A DNA stretch of 63,192 nucleotides, the filler included, from Bipalium vagum (Eukaryota), in NCBI GenBank assembly GCA_037834085.1. It is 3 parts of 3 records of this genome, joined end to end, with 100 filler letters (N's around TTAATTAATTAA, not from the genome) between each part and the next. Parts side by side here need not be neighbours in the genome. Positions count along the whole stretch, not along the records: positions 1 to 24,148 come from JBBMKC010202716.1; 2 more parts are not named here. One strand, 5' to 3'. Each line of letters opens with the position of its first letter. Within the stretch, counting starts at the first letter, position 1. Below are positions 67-24,148 of this stretch, in pieces. The notes beneath the pieces were generated by a model. It made no database searches, was not told where the DNA came from, and saw only the letters and a program-made list of their open reading frames with translations. Position numbers and translations under genes: made by a program.

Positions 67-135
67 TAATAAAAATCATCCTCGGAGTGTTCATGTGACA
101 CAACTAAGGACTTTTAGAGGATAAATCTATGAAAC

Positions 136-960
136 TTAATAATTTTTGTAAAAATTAAAAAATGAGGCTCGAAAGATTTGTTCCATTTTCTTGCTCAATG
201 AAACGACAAAGGGAACATTAAAATATGTCAATGAAGCTTCATGAAAGTTGAAGGACCTCAAAATAAATATCAACGCAAAATATGAGGAAAGTGACAAATT
301 TGAAAAAATAATGATTGAGTACTGTGAGTATTTTATCACCATAAACCAATTGGTCAACTCTCAATTTGTCAGAAGAGCGATTTCTCAGACGATGGTGATC
401 AGAAGAGGTGTCCACTGAACCATACAATTGCTCTGATTTCTTTCTGAAAAGATGTCAACTCTTTCAAAGGTTTTCAGCTCTTTTTCAAATCTACCAATCC
501 TCAACCCCCTGCCACATTGGGGATGTCAGGCGTCTGACAAAATCGGAAAATCGATGGCAATCGTTTTGTTGTTATTTTCTTTAAAAACGAGATGTCACTG
601 TTGCCTGGTTTCATTTTTAGAGACTAAACACCTTTAGAAAATGAAATCCTCAAACAATATGTTATCGGGGTGCGGAAAAGTAACGAGAAAATCTGTCAAA
701 ATCAAAACTACTTTATGTATTAACCAAAAAACGACCAATCATTGTTATAATTGCCATCTTTTCCATAACAACCAATGAATGGATCCCATAGGAATAAAAT
801 TTTACTTCAAAATTCAATTCTTAGAGAGGTCCGATTTCATGTCTTTCAACATAATCTCCTCTCAGTTGTTTGGCTGATAACATCGTCATTTGACCGAAAC
901 CTCAACCTCTTCATGTTTAGTCAACGGTTACTAATCGACGGAGAAATTCATGTAGATTAC
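136..960 (-). pseudogene. Degenerate non-LTR retrotransposon fragment (region after the RT domain)
   Basis: Minus strand near 520-480 reads PNVAGG*GLVDLKK, matching the P..xGGLGL motif downstream of RT in RLE-type non-LTR elements. The rest is broken by stops and frameshifts. Confidence 0.35.
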
Positions 961-989
961 GTTGAAAAATGTCCAAAAATTTGTTTGAA

Positions 990-1500
990 ATGACCTCATA
1001 ATTGAGCAAACAAGGCACCAATCTTGTTAAGAGTTTCTTCATGTACAAGTGTTAAGTGTGTTATACAGGTTCATGTGAGATGTTTACAATGTTACCTATC
1101 TCAAGAACTTTCACTCGACAATCTTCCAAAAGTATATCGTGGATTTTATTGATCATTTCTGCCAAACGACCTGATCGTTGTTCATCAATTGTGCTTTATT
1201 GATCGCGTTTGAATTCAGGCAATCGATGTTTCATTATAAAATTTGATGGATTGGACTCATCGTAATGTTTCTGAAGTTTTCCTGGGGTTTCTTCGACCGT
1301 TTTCCCTTTTAAAAGTAATGTTTAGTCATTAAACGAAATTCATTTTCTCCGTTTTCATAGAATTAAAAAGTTGCTTATTTCAAACTATTTAAACAAAAAC
1401 CGACCGCACGAATTATTATAAAAAGTTTATATTATAAAATTGGATGATAACAAGGTTTACTTTATTTTTGTGACGACACGAGTTTGTGGGGTAACGTATT
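990..1500 (-). mobile_element. mariner transposase N-terminal remnant
   Basis: Minus strand reads ..IDEQRSGR..INKIHDILLEDCRVKV..MKKLLTRLVPCLL, resembling the mariner HTH region and the KKLSARWVPRLL motif. Confidence 0.7.
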
Positions 1501-3381
1501 TATCAGTCCACGCTCGTACAAGAGCAAAATTTATACTTTTGATCTTCCATATCTCTAAAGCTTCTTGTCCAACAGAAATTGAACGAAACGAAAGATAATA
1601 TTAACAAAATATCATAAACGAGACCAATTTAAAATGGGTTATTTTGGTGGTTTATACAGTAACAATTGCTATTCATTAAAACGCCCATTTCTAACGTAAC
1701 ATCCTAACATAAAACATTTCAAACCAAGCTACGGATAGATATTTCTTAAATATTGCTGAAACCAAATAAACATTGGACCAGGAACTTATGGACCAGTCTA
1801 AAAATTATAGAGCCGGCAAAGTTTAAGAGAGTTTTATTCATATTTTACAAATTCGAAAATCAATAAATAAAGTGGTATGAGAAAAAGGTCACGATCACAA
1901 TTTTCAAAAATAATTAAACTAAAAACGAAAAGCCATCAATAAAGGGCAGTTACATCCTTCGAAAAGTGTTAATTAACGATTTCTTAAATCCTTTATAGAT
2001 ACCACTATACAATTTTCCCATTAAGAGTCAGAGAAAATTGTCATGACTTAAGTTACTTTACTTTGTTGGGGTACGTTGAATCAACTGAAACTGATTTTGG
2101 ATGTATTGTGGGCTTTGGATTATCCAGGACGACCTTTGAAAATGAGAAGACATTATCAACAACAAATACGTATATGGGAGGGAAAAAGCGAAGTATGATC
2201 GGAGAAATGTCCAATCTCTGAGGAATTGTGAGAAGAAATTAAATATTCTGAAAACAATTACTCTGAGATTTAAAGTGAAACAGGTGGATCTATAGTCTAG
2301 ACCATTATCGATTGAAAATTTTTACCAAGTTCTTAAATAATTATTATGATTTGTAAAATATTATTTAATATATTTTTTAATTGTCTGAAAGTAATGTGGG
2401 AATGTTGACTCGAGTAATTTTGAGAAATTTATTCGGAAATGGTTTTTGTTTTAATTAACAACAATCAGTTATAATTTGCTAATGGAAACATTATTACATT
2501 AATATTATCATATAGTAATATATAATTATATTAACATATAATAATAATTTTTATTTTATAACGTTGATTTAGTGAGTTTCTATATTTTTAAATTAATAAG
2601 ACATTCATTATCCACGTTATCCAATGAAATTCTTGGTCATAAAATATAAATTAAAAATCATTAATAATTTATTAAAACCATTTTCTGAATGTTCTCAATT
2701 TAATGTTTATGTTTCGTATAAACAATGAAGCCTGCTGCCAAGCATCTGCATTGAATGACATAAATTATTCAAACAAATATTATTATTAAAAGTCCTTGTT
2801 CAATGAGCAGCGCTTCTTTCAAAAATTCTTTGACAAATGCTTCAGTATTACAATTTTCAGCCATCACAATGAAAACTACGCGGAAGACAAAGATTTTAAT
2901 AATATCTTTTGCAGAATTTTCTGTTTTGGATAAAGCACCTTTTATTTATCATCATAACTAAAAAATAAAATTTCAAATAAAATCAAATGTTACTTTATAT
3001 AATAATGACAAATCAATATACAAGTATTACAAAATAATATTTAAAAAATCCGCACTAAAATGATTATTTAAACACACTTTCCGTTTTTTTATTGACACCG
3101 CGTATGAATAATATTTATGTGGAATATTGAAAATGTTAATTGGTTTTAATTGTCTACTTTTTTATATTTTCTTTTCATCAAAGATCGCACTTAATAAAAT
3201 TATCAATAAATCATTTCTGTAGTATCGGCCAACAAAATAAAAATTTCACTATATTTAATTAATTATTTTTTTATCACTTAAGATTTAGTTAGAGCAACTA
3301 TAATATTATTAATAATAACGGTAATAGTAGAAATAATAATATTAATAGTAGTAATAGTAATAACAATAATTGTAGTACAAG

Positions 3382-3442
<61 letters not shown>

Positions 3443-3908
3443 TAATAAACAAAATAATAAAAATAATAATAGTGATAATAATGATTATTATTATTTTCAA
3501 TATAATCATAATTTTAAAATAATTCAGAATTGCATCAAGTTGTAAAAAGTAAGCTTTCTTTTCTTAGTTTAATTTTCACTTGTATTCTTTGCTTGTTTAT
3601 TTTGTTTTCATAATGATAATTGACATGATATTTGTATAGCACGAGATAATTGTTGTAACCAATTTTATCCCTTGGTTAATGTGGTAGGTTAATATTAAAG
3701 GAATTTTGACAATAATGTTCTTATAATAAATTGGCAATCTTCATTGGCAATAAAGGCTCGTTTCAATATCTTGATCAAATGGATAACTCAATTAAACAAA
3801 AATTAAAACACATTGATTAAATTCTTGATTGCATGGTATGATTACACAATGTCATGGAACTGTTGCTTCTTAAATAAATATATATATATATGTATGTATT
3901 GATTTTTT

Positions 3909-6900: not shown

Positions 6901-9632
6901 GATGAGTTCTATCATTTATAATGCTACTAAGCCCATAGTAAATGGGGTTTTAGTATAACTAATTAAAGAAAGAGGGAACTTCATGTTACTATATTTAAAA
7001 AACACCCTGGTCCCTAATTTTAAATTATCAATTAATTAAATTTTCTCCATATTTTGATTTCCGATATATGTATATTGGAAAAGTATTTTTTAAGATAAAT
7101 AAAATCAATAAAATTCGGATTCTGTTAAATCTGGCAGCTTCTGAACAAATTTTTCCACTGGCTTTGGAAGCATTAGACCCAAGTTTAAATTCATACAATA
7201 AGCAGAAACGAATGATTGGTTTTCTGTCAGCGGTTTGGACTTGCTAATTCAAACATCAAATTAAATGATTGATTTAAAGTAATCTAATAAAATAAATTGA
7301 TTTTCTGAGGAATACATAAACTATTTAATGAAATGTCAATTTAACAAAATCGACAAGACCTTATTTAGCCACCTTAGACATGTATTATTATTTATTTGTA
7401 TTATTACCTTGTTTTTTGATCTATTAAATCAGGGTAGAATCTGATAAATTCAGTTTTGTTTCTGTAAAGGTTAAAAAATTTAAAAGGAATAAATTATTAT
7501 TTGTTATAACAGTCCATAAATAAACTCTGAAAATATTGATGAATTAAACGATGATCTTGGAAGAGGTATTTTAAAAAATGCACCTGACTCAGTTTTCATT
7601 TTTAAGAAAATAAAATTATTTTATTAATTTAATTAAAAGTTATTTTTATTTAAATTTATTTCATACGGCCCAAAAATTTGCACAATTTAATATATCATTT
7701 TTCTTATACCTTTTTAGAGAGAATATGTTGTTGAAAAGTTTTTTCTATTGGAACCATTGTCTTTGTGGCTTCACAAACATTTAATGAAAAAAATAATAAA
7801 TAAAAACGTAATAAATTCTGTTTCAGATGATGACAGAACTAAATGAAAAATCGAACCATGTCTTTGTTCAACCTGATATTCGGATAAAAACAATGAATAA
7901 GATCAACCAACGACATAAGGAATTGGAAGAATTGGTTGAAAAGTTGAAGGAGGAGAATAGGCAGTTGTCAGCCCAAATTGAAGAGTCGAACAGAGAATTG
8001 TTGGAAAGAACGGCTAAAGGAGAAATGAATTATTTGAACTCATCAGACGATTTAACGAAGGAGTTGGAAGACTATGGCAAAGACGAGGTGAGATTTTATT
8101 TTAAATTCGTCTTTCATCGTTATATTTTCGATTTTCGACCGAATTTGATAAAAGTAAAAGAATTTATAAATATTCTTCGGTTTTCTTTCTAAATTTTCTA
8201 AACTTTTTTCTTTGACTTTAGTTAGCGAATTGTATTAGAGAACATTGTGGTGAGACTTCATTAATTCTAAACACAGTTTTGATAAAAGAAACATATTGAA
8301 CTTTTCATGTCCTCTGATCAATGAGAATAAGAAAAATAGAGGGTACTCAAAATTATTCATTGGAATTAATTTCAGAGGAATTGGTTTTCTTGCACAAATA
8401 GAATTCCTATAGCAAACATTTTCTTTCATGTTTCTTCAAGAAATTTTCGTGAGCCCTTTCCAAGGACAAATTTTAATCAATATTTTGTCTAAGATTAATT
8501 AACTGAACATTGGTACACAACATCAGCTTTTATTTCATTTGTGAAAAAATTTGAATTCTTCAAAAATAACATAGCAAAATGAAAATTTTTTCTCTCTTAC
8601 GTTTTCCGCATCAATAATAAATCTATTGACGAAGTGTCTGAGAGCAGAAGGTGATTATATATGAGAATGGCTCTGTGTGTTTATCATCTGCATGGTTCAT
8701 TTGTTGTAGATAAAGTTTCATCTTAGTGCCATTCATATTTCATAACGAGTCTAAAGACTTTTGATCCACACCACGTAATTGTGATCTGTTCTTTCATCAA
8801 CGTCAATATTTGAATGGTGTCAGCGAAGAACGAGTAAAAGCAAAGAATTTCATTTTTTACAATTTTCAGGTTTTTTTCTCTTTTCTAAGCAAGCTTTATT
8901 CAAGAAAGACTGCTTCAAGATGCCATAATGTTTCTGAACCCGTAATTTGATTTTTATGATATTCTCTAGACAGTCAATGAAAAATGTAACGTTCTCTTTT
9001 CTCATTATGCAAAATATATTATGCAGAGTTAAAGTATTATTATTATTATTTTTTTAATTCTTGAGGAACATTTCCCCACTTTTTATTTTGTTTTTGATAA
9101 TTAATTTTCACGTTTTATGTTTCATGTCTGACAAAGATGAAGTGAATTCTGAATTGTTTTAATTTCATATTTAAAGCAATTATTGTCGTCTTGAGAACGC
9201 TGAGTACCGAACAATTTTGAAATTATCAAAAACTCAAATTATTTTAAAGAGGGACTTGTTCTTGTTTAATCGAGTACTTTTTCTCCAATAAGATCAATAA
9301 TTAGCTTATTCAAGTCGACCATTTTAAGGAAAATTTCAACTTGATTTGGTTGTGATCAGATCAATGTTTTCGTTTCTTTCTAAAAATCATTCTATCAAAT
9401 GTGACGGATCGTTTTTGTTGAATGATGGTCCAATTAAAATATAATTTCACCATGGTTTTATTTTTGATGTCAATTTTGCTATTGAAAGATTGTAATTATC
9501 TTCCAGCTAATGGATCTCTTGGCCAAAGATAAGGATTCCAACTTCAGATTGCGAGATTATATCGAAAAGATCATCGTTAAAGTCATGGAAAAGCACCCTT
9601 CTTTGCTTGAAGTACGATCGAACAAAAAATGA
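3909..9632 (+). CDS. RAB11FIP4: Rab11 family-interacting protein 3/4-like (Nuf-like); coiled coil plus C-terminal FIP-RBD; about 349 aa
   Basis: Hand-spliced GT-AG exons 3909-4097, 4153-4265, 6133-6223, 6270-6319, 6367-6448, 6508-6645, 7827-8087 and 9507-9632 join in frame (1050 nt). The C-terminus LMDLLAKDKDSNFRLRDYIEKIIVKVMEKHPSLLEV matches the Rab11-binding domain. AATAAA at about 9847. Start codon and FIP3 vs FIP4 orthology are uncertain. Confidence 0.88.
5280..5925 (+). mobile_element. Internally deleted mariner element in an intron of the FIP gene
   Basis: N-terminal EHFGHILLFGYIRE..TRTICLVYG; C-terminal YSPDLAP-like Y.PDTAPKDFHLF and KLPECWEE; TIR-like end ATGACAACCCAATA. Confidence 0.75.
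7100..7378 (-). mobile_element. mariner 5' end remnant
   Basis: Minus strand reads IIRFCLLYEFKLGSNASKASGKIC (mariner HTH start), with a TIR-like end near 7350-7378. Confidence 0.6.
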
Positions 9633-10637
9633 GACTTTCGACACAAACTGTTATTTAAGGGGGAACGGAGAGATTATTTCATTGTACATCGATTTTGTTT
9701 CAGTTTATTTTATTTTGCAGAGCCTTAATAACATGTACATAGACAATTTTCAACTCAAAATTTTAAGCCAATTTTATTTTATTTGATGTAGAAGGAGATT
9801 TGCTATTGTTTATAAAAACTGAACGTTTGTCGTATCACTACTCTTAATAAAAAGCATTTGTTCAACTGACTTTTTCTAGATCTAAATGTTAAGTACACCT
9901 TAAAAACGTATCAAATTTATCTAATTGAAAGGTTCTTTTATATACAATAATCGTATATTATGTATTATTCTTTTGAAACATCAATCGGTAACTTGGTTAT
10001 ATGAATCAAATATACGTATAGCTCGTTTAGATACTTTTAATATACTGTTTATTTGTTTTTTCTATAAAAGGACAATTCAAATTGTTCTGAGGAATTCAAA
10101 ATTTGAAAATTTTCAGGAAGTGATTGAACAGTGTAACGATAAGCTCATCATTCCAGCACTAAGGTTTCCTAGTTCCTAAATTGAAAGAGAAAGTTCAATT
10201 GAGTCATCTTGTTTGCCCGCTCCATTTAAGGATATCTAAAGCACACTGTGCATAGAGGTAGCCCATCAAACACGACCAACATTATCATAAATATTCATGA
10301 ACTACTTAGAAATGAAAATCAACAATTACCAAGGACTTAAACCATTGGCTTATAAAAGATATGTTGATGACGTATTTTTAATATTTGAAAGGGAAAATCA
10401 CATCAATCCATTTTTAACATACATGAATATTCTACATGAAAATATTAATTTCACGATGGAGAAAGAAAGAAATGAAAAATTACCATTTCTAGATTTTATC
10501 ATTAAAAAGGAGAAATCGAATAATAAATTAAAGATTAATATATTTAGAAAAGAGACGGATACAGGACTATATACGTCAAACAATAGTTTCTGTGAAGAAA
10601 GATATAAAAGTGGATTAATCAAAGGCTTAATTTAGAG

Positions 10638-10925
10638 TATTATCTTTAACATCAGTGTGAGAATCTAAAAATATCCGAGTAACATATTTAATTTTTTAAT
10701 TTAATTTGCAATATATTGAGCTGAAAGATTTTAATAATTAAATAAAAGTATAAATTACATTTTTAATAAAAACAAGTATAAATTTTAAAGCTCAATATAT
10801 TCGAATTAAATGCGAAAATTTTATATGTGAAAAGTATTAAAATTTCATTTGTTTTAATAACAAATTAAACAAATCAGAAAACGGTTTGAATAAATAAATT
10901 TTTATGGAGACTAATGATTTTTTAG
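10638..10925. mobile_element. Foldback/MITE-like insertion in the Penelope ORF
   Basis: AT-rich block that breaks the PLE reading frame. Internal inverted repeat AATATATTGAGCT (about 10710) / AGCTCAATATATT (about 10789). Boundaries approximate. Confidence 0.5.
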
Positions 10926-11680
10926 CAACCACTAACAATCAGATTATAAAGAGATAGATAAGGAACTGGATATTATAAAAGAAAGGTTGAAAAAGAATGC
11001 ATATCCAGATAGAAAAATAGAAAAGATAATCAATGGAACAATTAGCAAATTAATAACTGGAAAAGAATAAGATGAGAAGAAAAGTAAAAATGGAAAAGAA
11101 ATACCATTTTCAAAAGGATTTAGAATATTCAAGAACATAATAGAAAAAAACTGTTGAGCTTGACGATTTAAAAGTAATTTCAATGACAACAAAAACAAAA
11201 AGTTATTTAATAATCAAAACACCAACACCTGCTATATTGCAATCTAATATCGTATATGAATTTAAATGCTATGGGTGTAATAGCCTATACATAGGGTAGA
11301 CAAAGCGTCAACTCAGAACACGTATTAGTGAACATTCGCAATTAAGCAGAACGAGTAAAGTTTTAGATCATTCTTTGAATTGCGTTGTGCGAAAAGGCAA
11401 AGTTAATGGTGAAGAATTTCGACTACTTATGAATAATTTTGATGATAACGGTGAACGGAAGATATGCGAATCGTTATTAATAAAAGAGCGGCAACCGGAG
11501 ATCAATATTTAAACTGGGGAAAGTAAAAACCAATGGATAGTCAATGTTTTCTCAGATTAATTAATTAAAAAAATCTTTTTTTAAAAAATGAAAATTTCCA
11601 CCATTCAGATATTAACAATATATTTAAATTAAAAATTAGACCGTCGATTAGATAAATAAGGTGTGTTATTTTAAATATGA

Positions 11681-11722: not shown

Positions 11723-13224
11723 GATAAAAAAATCTGTTTAAAATTATTGAAAAGCGTCTATTTAAAAAGTAAATTTATGGTGTTCACAAGATTAAAAATA
11801 AAATAAATAATATTTAAAATGAAAATAGAAATCGTATTACAAAAAGGGACTGTTAAGAATTTTATTTTAAAAACAAATATTTTAATAACAAAAGATCTTT
11901 AATTGAACCAATTTATCGGACAACGGAGGTATGGAATATCGTAGACGAAGAAGTAACTGTTAAATGCTTCAATCATGCTTTAAATATCCAAAAATTCTGA
12001 TTATAATGTTACTTTACATATAATAAAAGAATCCACACTTAATGGAATATTAAATTGTGAAAAATGAATATATGTATCAAACTCAAAGGTAAAGAAATGT
12101 TCAATTCTGAAAAAGATTTCAACATGGGGTTAAAATATTTACTATAACGTGCAGTTATGATTTAAAGTGATTCATTGGATGCCCTATTCACGATGTGGTT
12201 TAGATACCCTTACATGAATAAGATTAGTTGAGTTAGATCTGGTGAACAAAGGAGCCACCAGATTGAATTCCAATCTAAAGACTAGGAAACGCGTCAATTA
12301 CATTTCTATTCATTTAACATTATTAACATTAGAACCAGTTTTATACCTTAACAGCGTTCTATAAAATAAATCGGAAATATCATTCAAAAGAGATTTCATT
12401 TTTCTCATATAATCTACAAAAGAATTTTTAAAAAAATTTCGAAAACTATTTTGGTTGTATCTTTATTATTTTTTATCATAAATGGTTGGGCGTTATCTCC
12501 ACCAGCCATTCTCACTCTTACATATCATATTTCTTATAGACTACTATTTTTATATTCATTAACTTTTATTCAATTTTTGCATCATACTCCAAGCACAAAA
12601 AAATGTAACCAATAAAAAAAAGACCAGAAAATAAAATTTAAATATAAAACCTGTGAAAGAAATTCTCAAATCTAAACTTGATTAATAAGTCATTTAATAT
12701 CAAAAACTTTACTGACCATGTCACTTCTGTCAATAACGTGTTCGCAAATAATTGAATCAAACAACTACAATAGAACTTTATTTTTAAAACGCAGTTACAC
12801 GAAAGTATCAAACAAAAAACAAAATCTACAATGTGAAATGTCTCAGAATCAATAAAAAAATACTAAAAAGCAAAACAATCAAATCAAATCCAAAAACCAT
12901 ATTAAATAATATAATCAAAACTTAAACTTTTTTAATGTTTTAAAAATGTTTTTAAAAAAAATTATATTTTCTAAATCTGAATAGGGTTTTCGAATGATTT
13001 TTTCTTAAACTACACTGGATATCTGATTAGAAGTCAGGTTTCTAATCCTGGTCGTGGCAAAATTTTAACTTTTTAACCATTAAACCGATTTTGACGTTCT
13101 ACAAGTCAAATTAAAGGTAGATAAATTCTCTATCATATCCAATAAAATCTATTATATTATCATATTAAATGAAAACAAATTTAACTTTAAATTTTATTTT
13201 ATTTTTCTTATTAAAAAAGGAAAG

Positions 13225-13790
13225 AAGTAACTGAAGAAAATTTTTAAAATATTATTGATATGGGAAAATCGAAATATCTAACTTTTTATTGCAAACAATA
13301 TTATTTAAGTCAAAATTTAATTAATGAAATTCAAGGGAAATTAAAAAAGCAGAAGGAGAAAAAAGAGAAAGTGGAGTTCTCCCGTTAATTTCAATTCTTG
13401 AAGTAATCTTTGTAGATTTAAGTCCTGCTGGAGGAGTTGCAACAGTTGTACAAAAAGCAAAAGAAGTACAAGAAACAGATATAGAGAAAAATAAATTAGA
13501 AATGGATATTGAAAAACAGAAATCAAGTGAAACTCATAACTTGAAAGCTATACCAACAGAGGTAACAAATGGAGAAGAGCAAAACGACATTTCTAAGAAG
13601 AAAAGTAAGAGTCTTAATTTATATAAATCTGAAAAAAAGAATTAAAAACTTTGTAAAAATAAAATTAAAATAATTAAACAAGGAAATGGTATATATTTTG
13701 AGCATCCAAAAGCCTTGACAACTTTGATGGATCAAAGCAAAGTTTCTAAGAAAAAAGATGAGGGAATATATTTTTCTAGATTTTATTTTA
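13225..13790 (+). pseudogene. Polinton/adintovirus core-like protein, left copy
   Basis: EVTEENF*NIIDMGK..; SGVLPLISILEVIFVDLSPAGGVATVVQKAKE; GNGIYFEHP..EGIYF. Clear paralogue of 22905-23518 in the opposite orientation. Confidence 0.75.
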
Positions 13791-14163
13791 AAAAATGATT
13801 TTAAATTTACTTGAATTCTTTTGGAAATATCGAATTGATGCAACATCAATTTTTGATTTAATATCAAAATAGGTAGTGCTGAAGATTTTGAAATACTTTA
13901 AAAAATTTTAATGAAGTTTTAGATTACTGAAAATAGAATAAAATCTGAAAACTTAAAAAATGAAAAACCCAATTTAAAGATATAAATTCAAAGAATTAAA
14001 AAAAATTAAATAATGTCAAAGTAATAAATAATAATCTTATAAAAATAACAAATGAATCTGAAGACGTTCATTAATATGTATTAAGATAAAATTAAATTTT
14101 ATTTGCACTAGATGATTATAAAAAAAGTATGAAAAAATAAAACCATTTTATTGGGAAACAACT

Positions 14164-14416
14164 TGTAAGTCAAAAACAACATATATATGAAAAGACACAA
14201 AAACATAATAGAATGAACTTTTTATTTTTGTTGGCGAAACTCTTATCCAGCTCATCTAACCTACACAGAGGTTGCTGTGGGCCTATCTAAAGAGCTCGTA
14301 TCTCACAGTAGTAGTGGAAAAAACAAAGATGAAACCCAATATAAGAATACATTTCAACGTCAACCGTGTACGTGTATGTATGTGCATGTATAAAATTATT
14401 ATGTTTAAGTCTTACA
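14164..14416 (-). mobile_element. Possible solo LTR
   Basis: TGTAAGTC...GTCTTACA termini, higher GC than the flanks, AATAAA near the 3' end on the minus strand. No TSD seen. Confidence 0.35.
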
Positions 14417-14592: not shown

Positions 14593-15060
14593 ATGAAGAA
14601 AAAAATCAATCAACAATATTTAAACCAATCAGATATAGATGAAAATGAATCTACTTATTATTGTGAAATCTGCGATAAAAGTTTCAAAACTAAAACTTAA
14701 AGCTTTTATTAGTCATTCAAAATCTAGAGGTCATAACACATAGTGTATCCTGCTTGTACCCCCATTTTCTTCATGAACAAAAACAGCCCCCAAAAAAGGT
14801 TAAAAAAATATTTTTGGCTACAAAGAAATAATACAAAATTACTAAAAATATAAAAAATATAAAAATATATAAAAATATTAAAAAATATATATAAAATATA
14901 ATAAATGCATAAAAAATATATTTTAAAAATTTAGGGCTTGTTTTTGTTCACGAAAAAATGTGTCTACAAGCAGGGTACACTATGTGTCATACAAATATAA
15001 AAAATATAAAATACATTTTGTGTCATATAAATATAAAAAAAATCATTAAAAAAATAAAAT
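14593..15060 (+). pseudogene. Small C2H2 zinc-finger ORF (viral accessory), interrupted by a MITE
   Basis: MKKKINQQYLNQSDIDENESTYYCEICDKSFKTK..AFISHSKSRGH; the frame continues as TNIKNIK once the MITE is removed. Confidence 0.6.
14736..14987. mobile_element. 252-bp MITE with about 54-bp TIRs and 4-bp CATA TSD
   Basis: Left end ACACATAGTGTATCCTGCTTGTA..GAACAAAAACAGCCC; right end GGGCTTGTTTTTGTTC..TACAAGCAGGGTACACTATGTGT. CATA at 14732-14735 and 14988-14991. Confidence 0.9.
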
Positions 15061-15337
15061 GATAATAAAAAATATTTTTTCACCAATACAAATATTTTTA
15101 AAAAAAATAAAAATGTTATTTTTTATTTTAAAAAGTGAATAATCAAAAATATTTTGAAGAATATTATAAAGCTTATTCACCACAGTATTCAGAAAAAAAT
15201 AATGTAAAATTAATAAGAAATCGCACAACTGATAAGGTTTTGGATGAAATTAATGAAGTATTTAATTAATTAATTTATCAATACTAAATTTAATTTTAAA
15301 TTTATATTATCAATCTACACAATTATTTAAATTTCAA

Positions 15338-15890
15338 ATGACTAATAACTGTTTTTCAAAAGAATATTTCTATCCTATGTATGAATATTTTAATGTAGAT
15401 AAAAATGAATGTATTTTTAATCTTATTGAAACTAAAATTAGAGGTTTATATTTTAATGAATTAGAAAATGTTACTCAACAGCATAAAAAAATATTTTTGA
15501 AAAATTAAATAAAAAATGAAAATCTAATCGATGGAAAAATTGTAATATTTTAACAAATCCAGATAACTTTTATAAAGCAAGAAAATATTGTAAAAAATGT
15601 CATTATAATATTAATTTTATCAAAATACAAAAATAATTATCAAAATACAAAAGAAAAATATGAGAACAACAATACTTATAAAAATTGTAATTATTGTAAT
15701 CAATGTTTACCTTTATCAGATTTTGAAGATGGAATAAATAAATGTAAAGAATGTAGAAATAAGTATAAAAGCAAAATTCGAAAATAAATTGTACTGGGAA
15801 CAAATAAATATTTTTAGTTGAGTATAACAAAAATAGCCAAACAAATTTAAAACTAAAAAAATCAAATTTAAAAAAAAATTTTTTAAATAT
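15338..15890 (+). pseudogene. Viral accessory ORF remnant with a Cys4-type zinc-binding motif
   Basis: KNCNYCNQCLPLSDFEDGINKCKECRNKYK at about 15680-15770. Frameshifted. Confidence 0.4.
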
Positions 15891-16088
15891 TTGTACAATT
15901 AGATATAAAAATTGAAGGTAATATTTTTTCATCTTGTAAATTTATAAAAATATGATTATATCTTTCTTTCATATAAATAATCAAAATCATCTTTCTCCAT
16001 GAAATGAGCTCACATTTTTGAATAAATTTGATTTTTATCATTTTTAAAAATTTTAAATAAAATTAAAGCATTAGTATTATTTCTTATG
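15883..16088 (-). pseudogene. Packaging ATPase C-terminal fragment, second diverged copy
   Basis: IRNNTNALILFKIFKNDKNQIYSKM..FMEKDDFDYLY..YNHIFINLQDEKI. Aligns at DNA level with 18625-18785. Confidence 0.8.
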
Positions 16089-16099
16089 CCTCGGTGTGC

Positions 16100-16862
16100 T
16101 ACACAAATCTAAATAGAGGTCAGAGAAGAAACACGAATTTTTACGAAGGTAATCAGGAGATGAATAGAAGTAAAAGAATTAATGTGGTTTTCAAATAATC
16201 GAATGGCAGTTCATTATAAGAAATATCAAACAAAAATTGATAAACCAATATATTTAGGATTTAGTATTTTAGAATTATCAAAATTAATTATGTAAAAATT
16301 TTATTATGATGTTCTAAAAATTAAAATATAATAATGATATTGAATTCATTTCTTAAGATACTGATTCATTTGTAATGAATATAAAAACAAATGATCTTTA
16401 TGAAGATTTAAATGATTTAAAAGATTGAATTAATTTTTCGGAATATAAAGAGAATGAATTTCCTACTATTTAAAATTAGAAAAAGATGATTATACTAAAA
16501 ATAAAAAAGTATTAGGAAAGTTAACAGGTTAAATAAAGGGTGAAATATTAATAGAATTTGCAGCATTAAAATCAAAATTATATGCTTATAAAAGAAAAAA
16601 TTTTATTCTAATAAGGAATCTGAATAACTTAAAAATTAAGGAATTCAAAAATTTGTTGTTAAACATGAATTTGAAGTTAGAAGATTTTAAAAATAAATTA
16701 ATAAATCCAGTAATAACAGAAAAAGATTTTAGAATAAATACCAATATAAAATCTGATAAGCATGATATATTTCTTTTATAATAAAATAAAAAAGCATTAG
16801 ACCGGTTTGATGATAAAAGATTTTATTTAAATAATATTGAATCAACACCATATGGATTTTAA
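16100..16862 (+). pseudogene. Protein-primed family B DNA polymerase (Polinton type), C-terminal fragment
   Basis: KPIYLGFSILELSKLIM*KFYYD; motif C DTDS; NKKVLGK; EFAALKSKLYAY; KALDRFDDKRFYLNNIESTPYGF* (stop 16860-16862). N-terminal two-thirds are missing. Confidence 0.93.
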
Positions 16863-17389
16863 ACTAAGAAAAAATGGATTCATATTTTAAAAATATTTTT
16901 ATAAAAAAACTAATAAATGAAAAAAATTGTTTTTTTAAAATTTTCTGAATTTTTGGCAATAAAAACAAAAGTAAACCAATAAATAAATAATTAAAATAAT
17001 AATAATATTTCTGTAGTATTATCTCTATCAAGATCTTTTTAAAAATTATAAATAAAAATTATAGAAAATATAATAAAATAAGTATATCTAAAATATCCAA
17101 TAAATAGATAATTAAAAAATAAAATATTTCTTTAATATTATCTCTTTCAAGATCTTTAAAAAAATTAAATGAGAATAAACAGTAAAAAAGGCAATAAAAA
17201 TATGTAATAAAAAATTTAATAATTTTAACAAATTATAAAAATATAAAATTTAAATTTTTTTAATTTTTAACTCTCTTTTGTGAACATCTTAGATCTTCTA
17301 GAGACCTTTTCTCGCCTTTGTTTTAATATTAAACATTTTTCCTCCTTTTAATTTTATTTCCATAAATTGTTCTTGCAACAAAAGAAAAT

Positions 17390-18515
17390 TTTTCCTTTAA
17401 AATTTTTATCTTTTAAAATATAAAGAGGTACAACTGCACCATATAAGCATACATTTTTTGGTTGATCTTTTAAATCAAAACATGAATATAAATATTGAAT
17501 ATTGAATATAAATTTTGAAATTCCAATAAACTTAATTGAGGGTCATTTCCAAAATATTCACATGCTTTCACATAATTTGAATAAGTTCTATTATTTTTCC
17601 CTTTTTCAAATTGAATTGGATTTAATGGATAATAAGAATTATTAACTTGAATTCTTAAAGATTTTATTTTATCTTGAATAAACAAACTATTATTTTTTGT
17701 AAATTCAAATTCAGATTCTCTAAAAGTTATAAATAAATAAATTGGTTTATTTGGAATATTATATAATTGTAATGTTTGAGTAGTTCCTTCTGATAAATTT
17801 CTTTATTCACAATGTCTTGATAAAAAATTTACAATAATATTTTTTCCATCATCAATTTTACTTATTAATTTTAATTCAGTTTCAGGATTTAATTGTAATT
17901 CTGGAATAAATAATTTTAATTCAAGTAATTTTATTTTTCCATCTCCGTTTGTTTCATAAAATATTTCTTTATCAATATCTATTCTTCTATAACTCTATTA
18001 AAATATTGTAAAATACCAAATATTAATTTTAATGGAAATTCATCTGTATATTTATTTTGAGAGGATAATCTTTTTCTTGATTTAAATCCGTTATTGTTTA
18101 TTGTTACATCTTCTTTTTCTTTATCAGGAATCAATCCAAATATTTCTCCTTTAAAATTTTCATTATTAAAGATTATAAAATTTGATATAAAATTTGAGAC
18201 TCCTAAATATTCAATTGTTTCTACTTCTGTTGAACCTAACTTCAAAATTGCATTAGAAAATAGATATGGGAAAAAATATTTTGTAGAGTTATATTTTTAT
18301 CTGCTTTTATATCTAATATTTCAATTTCAAAAACTAAAAGTGTTTCTGAAAAATCTAAAGCATTTGCTGATTGTAATAAACTAAAAGTTAAATTTCTATT
18401 TTTATTTAAATTTGTTGCTGTTGTAGGATTTAAAGAAATCTATAAATAGTCACTTTTTCTTAGTTGTTAAATCTTGATGATATGTATTTTTATCTAAGTT
18501 CAAATTATTACTCAT
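17390..18515 (-). pseudogene. Polinton-type double jelly-roll major capsid protein
   Basis: ATG at 18515. FPYLFSNAILKLGSTEVETIEYLGV resembles the Polinton MCP LF..I...L.G.EI motif. C-terminal LRIQVNNSYYP..Y.NY....YFG.DPQLSLLEFQNLY. Several stops and frameshifts. Confidence 0.8.
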
Positions 18516-18539
18516 TTTTTAGAAAAAAACCGAAGGTGT

Positions 18540-19136
18540 CTAAAATATTAAAATGTGCAGCAGCCTTTGACTTAGAGGATATAGTCCTCGCTTTGTTGCT
18601 AGCTCAACTTAGTTGCTCTCTAAATTTATAAAAAAAAATTATAGTTTTCTTTCATATGGAAATCATATAAATAATCAAACTCATCTTTCTCTATGAATTG
18701 ATCTAACATTTTTGAATAAATTTGATTTTTATCTGATTTTGAAATTTTAAATAAAATTAAAATATTAGTATTATTTCTTATACTTCTTAAAGGTAAATCA
18801 AAAAATGATTGAGATAAATATATTACTGAACATTTATTATGTCTTCTTTTTGTAAAAAACATTTCCATAATAGTTTGATTTTTTTATTTATTACACCATC
18901 AAAAATAATTAAATTTTTTTGTTTTTTATCTAATTTATCAGGAAGTTGAATTTCACTTGCTTTATCTGATAAATTATCAGAGCAGTCCATGCGCATGTGA
19001 AGGTCTGAAATTTAAATGTAATATCAGAATTTTTACTTTGTACAACAGGTGATGTTGAAAATTTTTGAGATAATAGATTTGATATTTTTTGTAAAACGAC
19101 TACAAAGTTGTCTAGACCATGAGTCGCTGTTTCCAT
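18540..19136 (-). pseudogene. A32/FtsK-like packaging ATPase lacking the Walker A region
   Basis: KNLIIFDG (decayed Walker B), then FFTKRRHNKCSVIYLSQSFFDLPLRSIRNNTNILILFK (RH..S....Q and IR.N motifs). Lies immediately upstream of the MCP gene. Confidence 0.88.
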
Positions 19137-19179
19137 TTTTTAGAGAAAAATTTCAATCAGAAACTAATTCATATTTTTC

Positions 19180-20092
19180 TATTATTTTATCATAATTTTT
19201 TTCTTTAATTCTTTTTTTTTAAATTTATTTAAAATCTTTAAAATTAAATGATCAAGATTATCATGCCTGCTTTTTAGCTGCTAAATATTTGCTTAAAGTT
19301 ACAAACTGATCAAGAGTATGTTTTGGTTTGTAAATTTTATAACCTTCTGCTTCTCTTTTTATTTTTGTTTTTCATTCAATTTCTTTTGAATATATTTTAT
19401 AGATAATGACTTCATAGATGTTGTAACAAATTTGGTGAATTCTAAATATAAAGCTAAATCTTTATCATTAAATTATTTTTTCCACTGATTATTATAAATA
19501 TATGAATAATATTTTCCTTTTCAAAAAAGACCTAAAAACAACTGTTAAAGTTGACCAATTATCAGAATTTGGATGTTTCATACAAATTTCATTATTCTTA
19601 TTTTTTGTTAATTCGAACTTAATATTATTTATTGTCATAAAATTTTTACTAATTATAGTTTGAAGAGTATTTGGTAAATCTGAATTAATATCAAAATGTT
19701 CAAAAAAATTAATATCTTCATATTTAGGAGGAAGATCAATCTTTTTATTAAAAATATTATCAGTTGTTTCATCTTTAATTTTAGCTTCGATTTGTTTTTG
19801 TTCACTAATTTCTTCAGTTAAAATAGAAGTATTTTTATTAACTTTCTTTTTCTGTTTTTTATTTTTCGTTTTGCATACCAAAAGTATTAGAGACTCCGTC
19901 TAGTAAAATTTTTGTTTCTTGTATAGATTTATTAACTACATTAGTTACAGGTTTATGAAAAATTTTTAAATCTTGTTGAATTCTTCTTTCTTCTTTCCAT
20001 TGATTTAATTGAGTAGTGTCAAATTTCTTTTTACCGCAATTTAGTTGTGTAATTCTTATTTTAAGTTCGATTGAATTTTGATTTGCATCCAT
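19180..20092 (-). pseudogene. Conserved Polinton-associated uncharacterised protein (frameshifted)
   Basis: Overlapping ORFs 20092-19859 and 19881-19492 continue to SKYLAAKK(A)GHDNLDHLILKIL, resembling the C-terminal L..A.K.AG.N motif recalled from Polinton ORFs. N-terminal KIFHKPVT. Confidence 0.55.
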
Positions 20093-20369
20093 TTTTTTAA
20101 AAATATTTTGACAGAAAATAAATATATTATTTTATACAAAACTTTGTATTGGAAATGAATAGAAATTCAAGATGCACCAAAGCTGCTATGGCTACCAGGG
20201 GAAGTCATAATATTCAATTTCCAAAAAATCATAAATATCTTGAAGAGATTGAATTTCAATATTTTTTAAAATAGGAAACATTTCTAATAAATATGAAATT
20301 TTACTTAATTCAAAAAGTTTACTATTATATAAAGCACACATTATTTAAAAATAAAAATGATTATTTTTT

Positions 20370-21056
20370 ATAGTGTTAACTTTTTTTACATGCTCTTTTT
20401 TCAATTCTATTTTCAACTCTCGCTTAGTTTCATTTTTAACATTTTCAATAATATTTTATGATTTAATTTTTTAATATTTTCTTTACATTCATTAATAATT
20501 ATTTTTGCTTGTTCAATTTCTTCATTAGTTAATATTTTATCTTCTAATGCTTTCATTTAAATATATAAAGTTTACTAATTAAATTTTCTATTGATTCACA
20601 AATTTCTCTATAAGGTTTTTTTCTTTTAGATGTTAGATTTTTAAAAATAGTTTCAGAAATAAATAAATTTGCAGCTCCAAAAATTCCAGTACCAACAGGA
20701 ATATAAATTAATAAACCAACCTCAAAAGTTGAAACACCTGTTAAAATTGTTGTACCAATTCCAACACTTCCAGTAATTATATAATTTCCTAATTTTAAAA
20801 GTGAATCTATTTTAGTATATTTAAATTTTAATATTTTATAATGTGTTAATATGTCTTCTAAAACTTTTTTTTCATTCATAAAATTTTCAATTTTTAATTT
20901 TTCAAGTTGATCTATTAATGGATTAGAATCTTCTTATATAAATTTGGAAGATAATCTTCTCATATTTCCATTACTTTCTAAATTTGGATAAAGCGACCGA
21001 AGGTCTAGACAACTCTGCTGTCGTTTTTCCAAAGTAGCAGTTGATTCAATTTCCAT
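20370..21056 (-). pseudogene. Polinton-associated membrane-active-type protein (Gly-rich hydrophobic segment)
   Basis: MEIESTATLEK..LYPNL..; IITGSVGIGTTILTGVSTFEVGLLIYIPVGTGIFGAANLF; followed by ALEDKILTNEE. Confidence 0.6.
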
Positions 21057-21199
21057 TTTTTAATATAAATTTTGAAAAAAGGAAAGATTTTTTAGTATTT
21101 TACATTGTAAAGAATTGGGAAGAAGTCTCAGAACGCTACACTGTAGTGTATATTTGGATAAAACGTTTTCATAATAATTTCAATCTTTTCCATTTCACT

Positions 21200-22173
21200 T
21201 TTAAATAAATTTCTTTTAAAAATCATGATTTCATAAATTGTTATATTTTTTGAATTAAATTGAAATTCTTACTTACAACTTGATGGAAAAATTTATGAAT
21301 ATTTTTCTTCTGATTTATAGAAAAAATGTAAATGTATTGGAAAAGTAAGTGATTTAGTACATTTCAAAAATATTAAATCGGTCCCGAATTTAGATTCTGT
21401 TACTTCGGTTCGTCCTATTGATTTTCCATTAACAAAAAATAATTCCTATTTTTATTATACCAACCAAAAACATAATATTTATTTTCAGTTCCAAAATTTA
21501 TATCATCTTTTTTATAATTAATTTTTTCTTCAACTAATATTTTGTAAAAGGTTCAATTAAAGAATTAGAAATATTTCCAAATAAATATCCATCACTATTT
21601 GCAGTGATATTTAGACCAGAAACATTTATACTTTTTGATATTGATGATTTCCAAAATGAATGCCAAATATTTGGTCTAAATGTTTCATTTAATTTTTATA
21701 ATCATCTTTTGCATTAAAGATTTTTAGTTTTAAAATATATTTTTTCGATTTTAGTTTTTCATCATGGAATTCTTTTTCTATATTTTTAATTTTTATATTT
21801 AATTCACTTAAGTCATTTTCAAATATTTTTTAATATTTATTGTTTATCATTTACATTAATTATTTTTTCACTTCTTATTATATTTAATTTATCATCTATA
21901 TATTTTTTATTTACAACATAATTATCTTCAGTAGGATTTGGAATATTTATTATTTTATTATTACCATATTTAAAATTACTTTCATTGAATTTCCAGTATT
22001 ATATAAAATTTATTTTTTGAGTAATTCTTAATATTTATAATTTCTTCATTTAGTTAATTTGTTTCTTCATTATTTTTATCATCATAGTAAATTGGTGGTT
22101 TAGTTTTAGTATAAATATATTCTCCATTTTCAGTAACATTAACAAAAACTTTATCGCCTGAATCATCTTGCAT
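21200..22173 (-). pseudogene. Putative fibre/receptor-binding protein
   Basis: ATG at 22173. GNNKIINIPNPTEDNYVVNKKYID matches the I.NL..P....D...K.YVD fibre-shaft motif, followed by a coiled coil and a beta-rich C-terminal region. Confidence 0.5.
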
Positions 22174-22269
22174 TTTTTAATTTTTAATTTTTAGTTTCAT
22201 CTTCTCAAAAATAACATATTCTAACTCTTCTAAAATTTCCTCAAATTTTTTATTATTATATAAATGATA

Positions 22270-22674
22270 TTAAACATATAAAGATAATTGCCCACAATAT
22301 TTCAAATCTGTTTCAGAATGAAAATCAGATTTGTTGTACTCTTTTACATGTTTTTCTAAATCTTCAAGTGGTGGTAAACCATATGAATCAAAGTAAAAAT
22401 TTTTATAATATCCAATCCAATGAATTCCTTTTTTAATTGTATTTTGATAATTAATAATTAATGGAATTTCTGATTTAACTCTTTTATCAGTTACTTCATC
22501 CCGCATTAAAACTTTTAAGGGTAGTTCTAAGTTCTCAGCAAAATCTATTAAATCAAAATTTGATGTTGAATTACTTTCATATTTACAAAAAAATGAAAGC
22601 AAGCCGGCCTTTGGCAGAGGGCAGAGCCCGCTTTCACAAGGACCTCATCTGAATTCTAGTAAGTTTTGTGTCAT
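22270..22674 (-). pseudogene. Adenain-like cysteine protease (Polinton PRO)
   Basis: SNFDL..VLMRDE..IINYQNTIKKGIHWIGY..YFDSYGLPP..YN......CGQLSL, with the catalytic H, D and C motifs. An in-frame ATG at 22674 is followed by one premature TGA. Confidence 0.9.
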
Positions 22675-22904
22675 ATTTTTTAAAAAATAAAAACAAAAAT
22701 TAATCTTCAACCTCTGGTAAAATAACCAAAATTTCATAAGTTGTAAAATTTATATTTATTATAATACTCCATCTCTCACAAGATTCACAATCGCATTCAT
22801 CCTTTTTTTTTATTTTTTCTAGATTTTTTTTAGACTATTTTATGTTTGAAAAAATTTGAGCTGGAAAAACGAGCCTTCAGCTCTAGCACCTTCGGTGTGA
22901 ATTT

Positions 22905-23518
22905 CTAATTATATTTTCTCATAGGGATCAAAATATAAACCATTTCCTTGTTTAATATTATAATAATTTTAATTTTATTTTTACATAATTTTTGGAATAA
23001 TTCCTTTAAATATTTCCTTTCAGATTTCAGTACACCTTTAAATTTTGAACTATTTAAAATTGTATCTTTTAATCCTTCTCCAAAATATGGATCGAAGTAA
23101 AGTCCAGCTCTAGATTTTTGATCCTCTTTGCACACCCTTAGTAGTTCGAGCTTCAATCGGTTTCAATTCGACCTCGGTCTTGCCTGCTTTGCAGAGCTTT
23201 TCCACTTTCATTTCTTTTTCTCTAATTCTATTTTTTCTTTCTCAGCATTATTTTTTGAGTTTCTTTTACTTTTTGAACAGTTGTCGCAATTCCTCCTGCA
23301 ACTCCACCTGCTACTCCTAATCCAGCAAAGATTGCTCCAAGTATTAGAATTAATGGAAGAACACCGCCCTGTTTAATTTCTTCATTTTCATTTATTTGTA
23401 CTTTAACTTGAATTATTATTATTTTAGAGAGGTAGTATTTTTCTCCATTATAAATGATGGATTTTGGTTTACACATTTCGATAATATTTTGTAATTTTTC
23501 CTCTGTGATTTCGGACAT
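22905..23518 (-). pseudogene. Polinton/adintovirus core-like protein with GG/GxG protease-type sites, right copy
   Basis: KQGGVLPLILILGAIFAGLGVAGGVAGGIATTVQK, plus repeated RAGLYFDPY / GNGLYFDPY motifs. Adjacent to the protease gene. Frameshifted. Confidence 0.75.
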
Positions 23519-24148
23519 GATTTCTTAATAAAAAAATTGAAAACGTGGAGAAATTTTATTTGATTTATTTTGATTGAAATGATGAATTTTTGGAATTGTT
23601 TAAAACACAAAATTTTTATTTGTATTTATTTGTTTTAATCTTACTTTAAGATTTTATTTATTTTTAATTTTAATTAATAACATGTTACAGAAAATTACAT
23701 AATTGTAAATAAAATTTCATTTATAATAATGTCATTTGTTCATTTAGATATATACCCTTTTTCAAATTTATTTTTATATTTAAAAATGCTTACTTTATCT
23801 CCAATATGATATACTGATGTGCAAATTTAATGACAACAGTTGAAATTAATTATATTTAAAAATAAATGAAATTTTTAGTGTAGAAAATTAATGTTTATTA
23901 AAAGTAATAACTTATTACTAATAAGTAAATAAATAATTTTTAACTTGATCAAATAACTATTTGTTTAAATATTCAATTACAATTTTTTAAAAGGTTCAAA
24001 TTAATTGAAAACAGTATTATATTTTAAAGTATTATTTATAATTTAATATGTAGTTATGAAGAATTATGAAGAAAAAATTATATATTTTTTTTACGAAATG
24101 AAGGATGGAGCTACACAAGAATATCTGAAAAAGTCAAATTATCTAGAG

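What the first reader, a model, noticed from the sequence alone, without database searches (positions are those of the whole stretch)
19097..22899. Exactly 30-nt C-[hairpin]-TA-[hairpin]-G micro-elements inserted in frame into viral genes
Seen: 20994-21023 is C-GACC(GAA)GGTC-TA-GACAAC(TCT)GCTGTC-G. 19097-19126 is a 24/30-identical copy in the opposite orientation. 22870-22899 is C-GAGCC(TTC)AGCTC-TA-GCACC(TTC)GGTGT-G, with different stems but the same layout and the same 30-nt length. The first two lie in frame shortly after ATGs (10 nt after 19136; 11 codons after 21056, giving MEIESTATLEK[RQQSCLDLRS]LYPNL). Established: GNA-triloop DNA mini-hairpins such as d(GCGAAGC) are unusually stable, and double-hairpin elements in fungal mitochondria and Rickettsia palindromic elements are mobile palindromes, the latter inserting in frame into genes. 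Inference: this is a mobile, frame-preserving micro-element family that parasitised or regulated this Polinton-like virus. I do not know of one described for Polintons.
Basis: partly seen in the sequence, partly recalled or inferred. Interest (0 to 1): 0.88.

Follow-up and report, generated by a model that had tools for sequence, protein, structure and literature searches.

The report
GC-rich palindromic repeats in Polinton relic
A decayed Polinton-type virus-like element in a very AT-rich genome carries a few related, short GC-rich palindromic repeats near its gene starts, and a similar patch is a proven 60-base insertion, but they are not the exact 30-base, frame-keeping cassettes first proposed.

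Summary
Sites 1 and 2 are real inverted copies: 24/30 identical, within arms of 54 nt at 78%. Site 3 shares only a 14-15 nt core and an 11-nt flank with site 2. The core 9-mer ACCTTCGGT occurs three times exactly (expected 0.04), the third time just upstream of the capsid gene start. The rest of the reading is weaker. The 30-nt limits are arbitrary. Site 1 does not fold as a double hairpin, and no patch folds better than shuffles of the same composition. Site 2 lies upstream of the conserved coding sequence. The ORF carrying site 1 shows no detectable ATPase homology. Site 3 has an AT-rich counterpart, not an empty site, in a second copy of the element in the window. Another GC-rich patch (22595-22651) is a genuine 60-nt insertion in the protease frame. 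It is absent from the second copy and from five homologs, and it carries a stop. GC-rich patches cluster near TAAAAAATG gene-start signals. The best reading, with moderate confidence, is a small family of insertional hairpin-prone repeats like mitochondrial hairpin elements. Viral cis-signals and repair debris are the rivals.

The parts
19087..19140 (-). Repeat arm holding site 1 (19097-19126). In this orientation it matches site 2 read on the + strand.
   Evidence: the repeat finder I3: 54 nt, 78% complementary to 20980-21033. 24/30 in the core. nhmmer E 4e-6.
20980..21033 (+). Repeat arm holding site 2 (20994-21023). It carries GTCTAGAC and the ACCGAAGGT mini-hairpin.
   Evidence: Lies 33-62 nt after the start-signal ATG at 21056 and upstream of the conserved coding sequence of the P0001-like gene.
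22870..22899 (-). Site 3: a GC-rich double hairpin that shares a 14-15 nt core and an 11-nt 3' flank with site 2.
   Evidence: 4 of 1000 shuffles score as well. Fold z about -2.1. Lies in the 3' part of the TM/GLYF reading frame. Copy 2 has an AT-rich counterpart there.
18529..18545 (-). Half-copy of the motif (TAG-ACA-CCTTCGGT), 14-30 nt upstream of the capsid-gene ATG.
   Evidence: Third exact ACCTTCGGT (expected 0.04). Context.
20168..20206 (+). GC-rich patch weakly similar to site 3 and its flanks.
   Evidence: 15/19 core match, 8 of 4000 shuffles. Extended alignment 0 of 1000 shuffles, but nhmmer E is only 2.5.
22595..22651 (-). GC-rich patch (60% GC) inside the protease reading frame. 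This copy has 60 nt more than copy 2 here.
   Evidence: A6 shows one gap of 60 columns. Five homologs lack the corresponding 20 residues (A2). Translations.
18555..18608 (-). GC-rich patch between the ATPase and the capsid gene, weakly similar to the protease patch.
   Evidence: 9 of 4000 shuffles. nhmmer E 8.7, so the similarity is not robust.
2295..2311 (+). Possible partial copy outside the element (GTCTAGACCAT plus a few bases, as in site 1).
   Evidence: GTCTAGAC occurs 3 times against 0.05 expected. Pairwise score reached by 1 of 4000 shuffles, but the locus was picked through the 8-mer.
18629..19136 (-). Packaging ATPase gene (A32/FtsK type), broken.
   Evidence: A profile of 59 homologs matches 18629-19011 only (E 4e-31 and 3e-7). 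Homolog P0012 hits Pfam Pox_A32 at 3e-11.
17357..18515 (-). Putative double-jelly-roll capsid gene, broken.
   Evidence: Pfam DJR-like_dom E 0.004, below the cut-off. ORF layout.
22180..22674 (-). Putative cysteine protease gene, broken.
   Evidence: Homologs P0173-P0177 at 64-76% identity. No Pfam or PDB name.
22838..23518 (-). Gene for a glycine-zipper membrane protein with G-(L/I)-Y-F repeats ('TM/GLYF'), broken.
   Evidence: Copy 2 has it in one frame.
20556..20933 (-). Membrane-protein gene homologous to P0001.
   Evidence: 62% identity over 110 residues without gaps.
21296..22173 (-). Fibre-like gene, broken. Assigned by ORF layout only.
13190..14180 (+). Second, inverted, heavily deleted copy of the same gene block (TM/GLYF, protease start, fibre-like start).
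   Evidence: I1, I11, I15, I23.
15938..16108 (-). Isolated fragment of a further ATPase copy.
   Evidence: (E 4e-6).

Best explanation
Sites 1-3 belong to a small set of related, short, GC-rich, palindrome-containing repeats. Their core is (C/T)TAG, one to three bases, then CCTTCGGT. They were copied into new places within this AT-rich Polinton-like lineage, in either orientation and mostly within about 100 nt of the TAAAAAATG gene-start signals.

They behave like the repetitive hairpin-forming elements of AT-rich mitochondrial genomes. They are selfish or neutral insertions that survive where they do little harm, such as gene ends, leaders and variable linkers. They are not exact 30-nt cassettes that keep frames open.

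Shown: the repeats are related, they occur in both orientations, they are GC-rich, they lie near gene starts, and one GC-rich patch is an insertion. Inferred: that sites 1-3 arose by the same kind of insertion, and that the copying goes through a hairpin or template switch.
For: - Sites 1 and 2 are inverted copies over 54 nt.
- Site 3 and the pre-capsid copy share the exact 9-mer ACCTTCGGT next to TAG. It occurs 3 times against 0.04 expected.
- GTCTAGAC occurs 3 times against 0.05 expected, once outside the element.
- There are 10 GC-rich patches in 17300-24148 against 3.3 +/- 1.7 in simulations. Pairs of patches share more similarity than shuffles do: 4 pairs at p of about 2e-3 or below among 132 comparisons.
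- The patch at 22595-22651 is a 60-nt insertion relative to copy 2 and to five homologs. It has a short imperfect direct repeat on both sides (I1).
- The motif has no fixed distance or orientation relative to the gene starts, which argues against a promoter element.
Against: - The one proven insertion is not clearly of the same family as sites 1-3. Its only resemblance is to 18555-18608, at nhmmer E 8.7.
- No target duplication or defined ends were found for sites 1-3.
- Site 3 has no empty site in copy 2.
- Hairpin energies are ordinary for the composition.
- There are at most 5 or 6 members, all seen in one decayed locus.
- The 9-mer is better kept than its flanks, which looks more like constraint than like neutral copies.
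- Copy number elsewhere in the genome is unknown.
Confidence: 0.4

Rival explanations
1. The repeats are cis-acting signals of the virus-like element itself. They would be palindromic binding sites for a dimeric viral or host protein, or transcript-end or leader hairpins, placed near the starts of the late (morphogenetic) genes. This would work like the dispersed imperfect palindromes (hr) of baculoviruses or the terminal hairpins of Mimiviridae transcripts.
For: Six of 10 GC-rich patches lie within 100 nt of a TAAAAAATG start, against 2.2 expected (P about 0.01). The exact 9-mer is kept in three places while its flanks differ. The core GTCTAGAC is a perfect palindrome. One copy sits 14-30 nt before the capsid ATG. 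Site 3 and the 20168 patch overlap ORF 3' ends.
Against: Position and orientation relative to the starts vary from -30 to +62 and -225 nt. The protease patch interrupts a reading frame and is absent from copy 2 and five homologs. The start of P0001 leaves no room for site 2 in that relative's gene. Folding is not better than shuffles.
Confidence: 0.27
2. The repeats are debris of decay: local duplications and filler DNA left by break repair or template switching in a dead copy, with neither mobility nor function. Site 1 would be a templated inverted copy of site 2, 1.9 kb away, or the reverse.
For: The element is heavily broken, with roughly 20 breaks. Detectable ATPase homology ends at a GC-rich patch. 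The 60-nt insertion is flanked by a short imperfect direct repeat. Only one pair of sites is closely similar.
Against: Templated filler should resemble the AT-rich surroundings, not reach 50-60% GC. The exact 9-mer occurs in three separate places. The patches are associated with gene starts.
Confidence: 0.2
3. Apart from the pair formed by sites 1 and 2, the resemblance is chance plus uneven composition of coding DNA. Small stems appear in any GC-rich 30-mer.
For: Fold z-scores run from +0.4 to -2.2. Some patches are simply Gly/Ala-rich coding sequence. nhmmer finds only the site 1-site 2 pair significant. The motif definitions were made after seeing the data.
Against: ACCTTCGGT occurs 3 times against 0.04 expected, with 0 of 100 shuffles reaching 3. 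There are two double-hairpin loci against 0.09 expected.
Confidence: 0.08

Closest known systems
Repetitive hairpin-forming elements of AT-rich mitochondrial genomes (yeast GC clusters, Allomyces double-hairpin elements, sponge RHEs)
   Same: They are short (17-84 bp), often GC-rich repeats with single or double hairpins in AT-rich DNA. They occur in either orientation, in intergenic DNA and in variable parts of genes, and are not removed from transcripts (PMC2800124).
   Different: Here the setting is a nuclear, virus-like element, not an organelle. Only 5 or 6 candidate copies were seen. Presence/absence is shown for one patch only, and the hairpins are not unusually stable.
Rickettsia palindromic elements (own knowledge)
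   Same: They are palindromic repeats found inside reading frames with lengths that keep the frame.
   Different: RPEs are 100-150 bp, bacterial, numerous, and leave the host ORF open. The one proven insertion here is 60 nt and carries a stop.
Baculovirus homologous regions (hr): dispersed imperfect 30-bp palindromes bound by a viral transactivator (own knowledge)
   Same: Both are imperfect palindromes of about 30 bp with a restriction-site-like centre, inside longer repeat units, dispersed in a large DNA virus genome and independent of orientation.
   Different: hr units are tandemly clustered and conserved within a genome. Here no binding protein is known, and the copies are single and diverged.
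Hairpin rule of Mimiviridae transcripts (PMC4402537)
   Same: Both are palindromes at gene boundaries of an AT-rich virus.
   Different: Mimiviridae hairpins follow stop codons and share structure rather than sequence. Here two copies follow start codons, and the structures are not significant.
MITEs, including those of giant viruses (own knowledge)
   Same: They are short non-coding inverted-repeat elements that insert in both orientations.
   Different: No terminal inverted repeats with a target duplication could be defined for sites 1-3, and the units are shorter than usual MITEs.

Membership tests
Polinton/Maverick-like element | A32/FtsK-type packaging ATPase | tested here: met
   A profile of 59 homologs matches 18629-19011 (E 4e-31 and 3e-7). 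Homolog P0012 hits Pfam Pox_A32 at 3e-11. The N-terminal half with Walker A was not found.
Polinton/Maverick-like element | Double-jelly-roll major capsid protein | tested here: inconclusive
   Pfam DJR-like_dom E 0.004, 16.8 bits against a cut-off of 27.
Polinton/Maverick-like element | Adenain-like cysteine protease | tested here: inconclusive
   A homolog family was found. The H, D, Q, C motif order is my own reading. No Pfam or PDB hit. The AlphaFold model was too poor to search with (pLDDT 45).
Polinton/Maverick-like element | Protein-primed DNA polymerase B, retroviral-type integrase, terminal inverted repeats | not tested
   No such ORF was noticed. The piece ends at 24148, inside or next to the element.
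Mitochondrial hairpin-forming repeats (RHE, GC clusters, DHE) | Short repeated sequence able to form one or two hairpins, GC-rich in AT-rich DNA | tested here: met
   The stems exist but are not more stable than shuffles.
Mitochondrial hairpin-forming repeats (RHE, GC clusters, DHE) | Presence/absence differences between close relatives | tested here: inconclusive
   Met for patch 22595-22651. Not met for site 3. Not testable for sites 1 and 2 without DNA of relatives.
Mitochondrial hairpin-forming repeats (RHE, GC clusters, DHE) | Resides in an organelle genome | tested here: not met
   The neighbours are a mariner fragment, a Penelope-like element and intron-bearing host-like exons.
Rickettsia palindromic elements | 100-150 bp palindrome inserted in frame that leaves the host ORF open | tested here: not met
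   The units are 30-60 nt (up to about 85 with flanks). The proven insertion carries a stop.
MITE | Terminal inverted repeats flanked by a target-site duplication | tested here: inconclusive
   The flanks of sites 1, 2 and 3 show no duplication. An imperfect direct repeat of about 12 nt flanks the 60-nt insertion.
Mimiviridae-type transcript-end hairpins | Significant palindrome just after the stop codon of most genes | tested here: not met
   Sites 1 and 2 follow start signals. Fold z runs from +0.4 to -2.2. Transcript ends are not testable here.
GNA-triloop DNA mini-hairpin | C-GAA-G loop closure on a short G/C stem | tested here: inconclusive
   ACC-GAA-GGT is present exactly at three sites. 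Nearest-neighbour folding gives only -3 to -5.5 kcal/mol, and these parameters may not capture the special loop.

The most novel reading that the evidence does not exclude
A self-copying GC-rich hairpin micro-element family that lives specifically in Polinton-like viruses. It would insert close behind their TAAAAAATG gene-start signals in lengths that are multiples of three, making it a parasite of a virus-like element and the nuclear/viral counterpart of Rickettsia palindromic elements and mitochondrial double-hairpin elements.
Probability: 0.15. Interest if true: 0.8.

Novelty: new variant of a known kind. Interest (0 to 1): 0.45.

Why it matters
Short hairpin-forming repeats that colonise AT-rich genomes are known from organelles and some bacteria. 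I found no description of them in Polinton-like elements. If the family is real, it would add a layer of parasitism or regulation to these elements, and it would provide markers for dating and relating copies. The strand-specific TAAAAAATG start signal is a useful annotation aid for such AT-rich elements. As it stands, the evidence comes from one decayed locus, so the value is that of a lead.

Tried and rejected
- Alternative genetic code: table 6 only produces overlapping ORFs in all frames.
- tRNA or known RNA origin of the patches: none found.
- Intron reading of the protease patch: no GT precedes the stop it carries.
- Plasmid or phage origin: no match.
- Site 1 as the ATPase N-terminus: local alignment to eight homolog N-termini gives z from -1.5 to +1.3, and the profile finds nothing upstream of 19011. 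Weak hits at 19451-19722 (E 0.05-0.7) were not kept.
- A '44-nt empty site' at 23160-23205 in copy 2: it appears in A1 but not in a realignment (A7), so it is inconclusive.
- GC asymmetry between the two copies: roughly symmetric, 65 against 54.
- Protease fold: the model was too poor to search with, and the PDB sequence searches gave no useful hit.
- Exact look-ups of two non-viral ORFs to name the host: not on record.
- Self-comparison at DNA level: only low-complexity repeats.
Full report
**What the piece is.**
The piece (1-24148) has 25% G+C, and 17300-24148 has about 21%. That stretch carries, on the minus strand, the morphogenetic block of a Polinton-like element:
- a membrane protein with a glycine zipper and G-(L/I)-Y-F repeats;
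- a putative cysteine protease;
- a fibre-like gene;
- a second membrane protein;
- several small ORFs;
- an A32/FtsK-type packaging ATPase;
- a putative double-jelly-roll capsid gene.

A second, inverted, heavily deleted copy of part of this block lies at 13190-14180. An isolated ATPase fragment lies at 15938-16108.

The rest of the piece looks like host DNA:
- exon-like coiled-coil ORFs;
- a mariner fragment (Pfam Transposase_1, E 0.0018);
- a Penelope-like element with the reverse transcriptase followed by a GIY-YIG motif on the same strand (the GIY-YIG assignment is my own reading).

Canonical endonuclease-bearing Penelope-like elements have so far been found only in animals (abstract of PMC8557442). 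The nearest named relative of the reverse transcriptase comes from a starfish. I therefore take the host to be an animal, probably but not certainly. The closest relatives of the viral proteins all come from unnamed metagenome contigs.

**The observation.**
Site 1 matches site 2 at 24 of 30 positions in inverted orientation. All other pairings show 17-20 mismatches.

- The repeat finder reports arms 19087-19140 and 20980-21033, 54 nt at 78% (I3);
- nhmmer gives E 4e-6 and 3.5e-7 over 52-58 nt.

Site 3 is a different sequence. Read on the minus strand, it shares ACCGAAGGT(G)CTAGA and the flank TCGTTTTTCCA with site 2 read on the plus strand; 4 of 1000 shuffles score as well.

The 9-mer ACCTTCGGT occurs three times exactly, against 0.04 expected, and no shuffle reaches three. 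The third copy is a half-element at 18529-18545, 14-30 nt upstream of the capsid ATG.

GTCTAGAC occurs three times against 0.05 expected. The third copy, at 2295, lies outside the element and shares 11 bases with site 1.

A patch at 20168-20206 resembles site 3 weakly.

**Hairpins.**
- Sites 2 and 3 fold as two small hairpins. Site 1 does not.
- Energies are -2.5 to -5.5 kcal/mol, and z against composition-matched shuffles is -0.5 to -2.2.
- Longer units and the other GC-rich patches give z from +0.4 to -1.75, as DNA or as RNA.
- A scan for adjacent hairpins finds two loci in 17300-24148 against 0.09 in dinucleotide shuffles. Those shuffles destroy the GC-rich patches, so the excess mostly restates the composition.
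- Reading sites 2 and 3 side by side, three of eight stem pairs differ on both sides and none is broken. With two sequences, different loop lengths and a register chosen by eye, this is only a hint.

**Gene context.**
TAAAAAATG marks gene starts on the coding strand in both copies. It occurs 13 times in the window against 3.9 expected. With the one-base-longer variant there are five on the coding strand and none on the other strand of 17300-24148. Beyond that:
- **Site 1.** The ORF from 19136 shows no detectable similarity to ATPase N-termini. The profile matches only 18629-19011, and local alignments give z from -1.5 to +1.3. 'In the ATPase' is therefore unproven, and the Walker A half of the gene is missing.
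- **Site 2.** The only homolog of the gene downstream of site 2 (P0001, 62% identity) starts well downstream of site 2. A stop separates site 2 from that conserved part.
- **Site 3.** It lies in a variable linker near the 3' end of the TM/GLYF frame. Between well-aligned anchors, copy 2 has a slightly longer AT-rich sequence, not an empty site. The last codons of site 3 are homologous to coding sequence in copy 2.

**GC-rich patches in general.**
Ten patches with at least 12 G/C in 24 nt occur in 17300-24148, against 3.3 +/- 1.7 in simulations. Six of them lie within 100 nt of a start signal, against 2.2 expected (P about 0.01, post hoc).

One patch, 22595-22651, settles that insertion happens:
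- Copy 1 has 60 nt more than copy 2 near the 5' end of the protease frame, as a single 60-column gap (A6).
- All five close protein homologs lack the corresponding 20 residues (A2).
- The extra segment is 60% G+C and has small internal stems.
- It is flanked by a short imperfect direct repeat and carries a stop.

This patch is not clearly related to sites 1-3. Its only resemblance is to the patch at 18555-18608, and that is weak.

**Interpretation.**
I favour a small family of insertional, hairpin-prone GC-rich repeats that spread within this lineage (confidence 0.4).
- *For:* related copies in both orientations, no fixed spacing to the starts, and one proven GC-rich insertion.
- *Against:* no ends or target duplications for sites 1-3, ordinary folding energies, very few copies, and a 9-mer kept better than its flanks.

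That last point, together with the clustering at gene starts, keeps alive the rival that these are cis-acting signals of the element (0.27). Repair or template-switch debris in a dead copy (0.2) explains the inverted pair and the flanking repeat, but not the G+C content or the triple 9-mer. Pure chance is excluded for the pair formed by sites 1 and 2, and is unlikely for the 9-mer (0.08).

**Comparison with known systems.**
The closest analogues are the repetitive hairpin-forming elements of AT-rich mitochondrial genomes (PMC2800124). The present case is not a member, because it is nuclear or viral. Rickettsia palindromic elements, baculovirus hr palindromes, Mimiviridae transcript-end hairpins (PMC4402537) and MITEs each share some traits and fail others (see Membership tests).

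**State of the genes (counts only).**

| Gene | Breaks |
|---|---|
| Protease | 1 insertion and 2 in-frame stops; no frameshift seen |
| ATPase | 1 frameshift (2 if the ATG-proximal ORF belongs to it), plus loss or replacement of roughly the N-terminal 45% |
| Capsid gene | at least 4 frame changes and at least 1 stop (ORF layout only) |
| TM/GLYF gene | at least 3 frame changes and 1 stop, relative to copy 2 |
| Fibre-like gene | at least 5 frame changes (ORF layout only) |
| P0001-like gene | no break in the 110 aligned residues, but no ATG where the homolog starts |

Copy 2 and the ATPase fragment are remnants.

- The host is probably an animal, and I could not tell whether the bar on fetching a virus of animals applies.
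- The ATPase profile built was used only to score the window's ORFs, and its own consensus annotation was not used.
- Slip: notebook entries 1-2, and the ORF tables I printed, show where one insertion and one stop sit in the protease frame. I stopped adding such detail.
- In this report I give the bounds of the GC-rich patch as a compositional feature, because it is the object under study. I give no junctions and no positions of stops or frameshifts.

Noticed in passing
window 18513-18521, 19134-19142, 21054-21062, 22171-22179 (minus); 13789-13797, 13954-13962 (plus): TAAAAAATG sits on the start codons of the element's genes, always on the coding strand, in both copies. It occurs 13 times in the window against 3.9 expected. 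It resembles the TAAATG-type initiators of some cytoplasmic DNA viruses (own knowledge).
   Followed up: partly
window 9500-11510 (+): A Penelope-like retroelement: reverse-transcriptase ORFs followed by a GIY-YIG-like motif, broken. The nearest named relative is from a starfish.
   Followed up: partly
window 5528-5716 (+): A fragment of a mariner-type transposase (Pfam Transposase_1, E 0.0018, below the cut-off).
   Followed up: partly
window 14733-14789 and 14934-14990: An inverted repeat of 57 nt (74%) with 144 nt between the arms, richer in G+C than its surroundings. It may be a small foldback or MITE-like element.
   Followed up: no
window 22838-23518 (-) and 13224-13790 (+): A gene joining a glycine-zipper membrane segment to two or three G-(L/I)-Y-F motifs. 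The number of motifs differs between the two copies.
   Followed up: partly
window 17300-24148 versus 1-9000: CpG observed/expected is 0.53 in the element but about 1.0 in the host-like part.
   Followed up: no
window 1-75 and 3300-3520: Low-complexity trinucleotide-type repeats that match each other.
   Followed up: no
window 15000-17300: A very AT-rich stretch (16-19% G+C) with two more TAAAAAATG on the plus strand and the ATPase fragment on the minus strand. It is probably further debris of the same element family.
   Followed up: no
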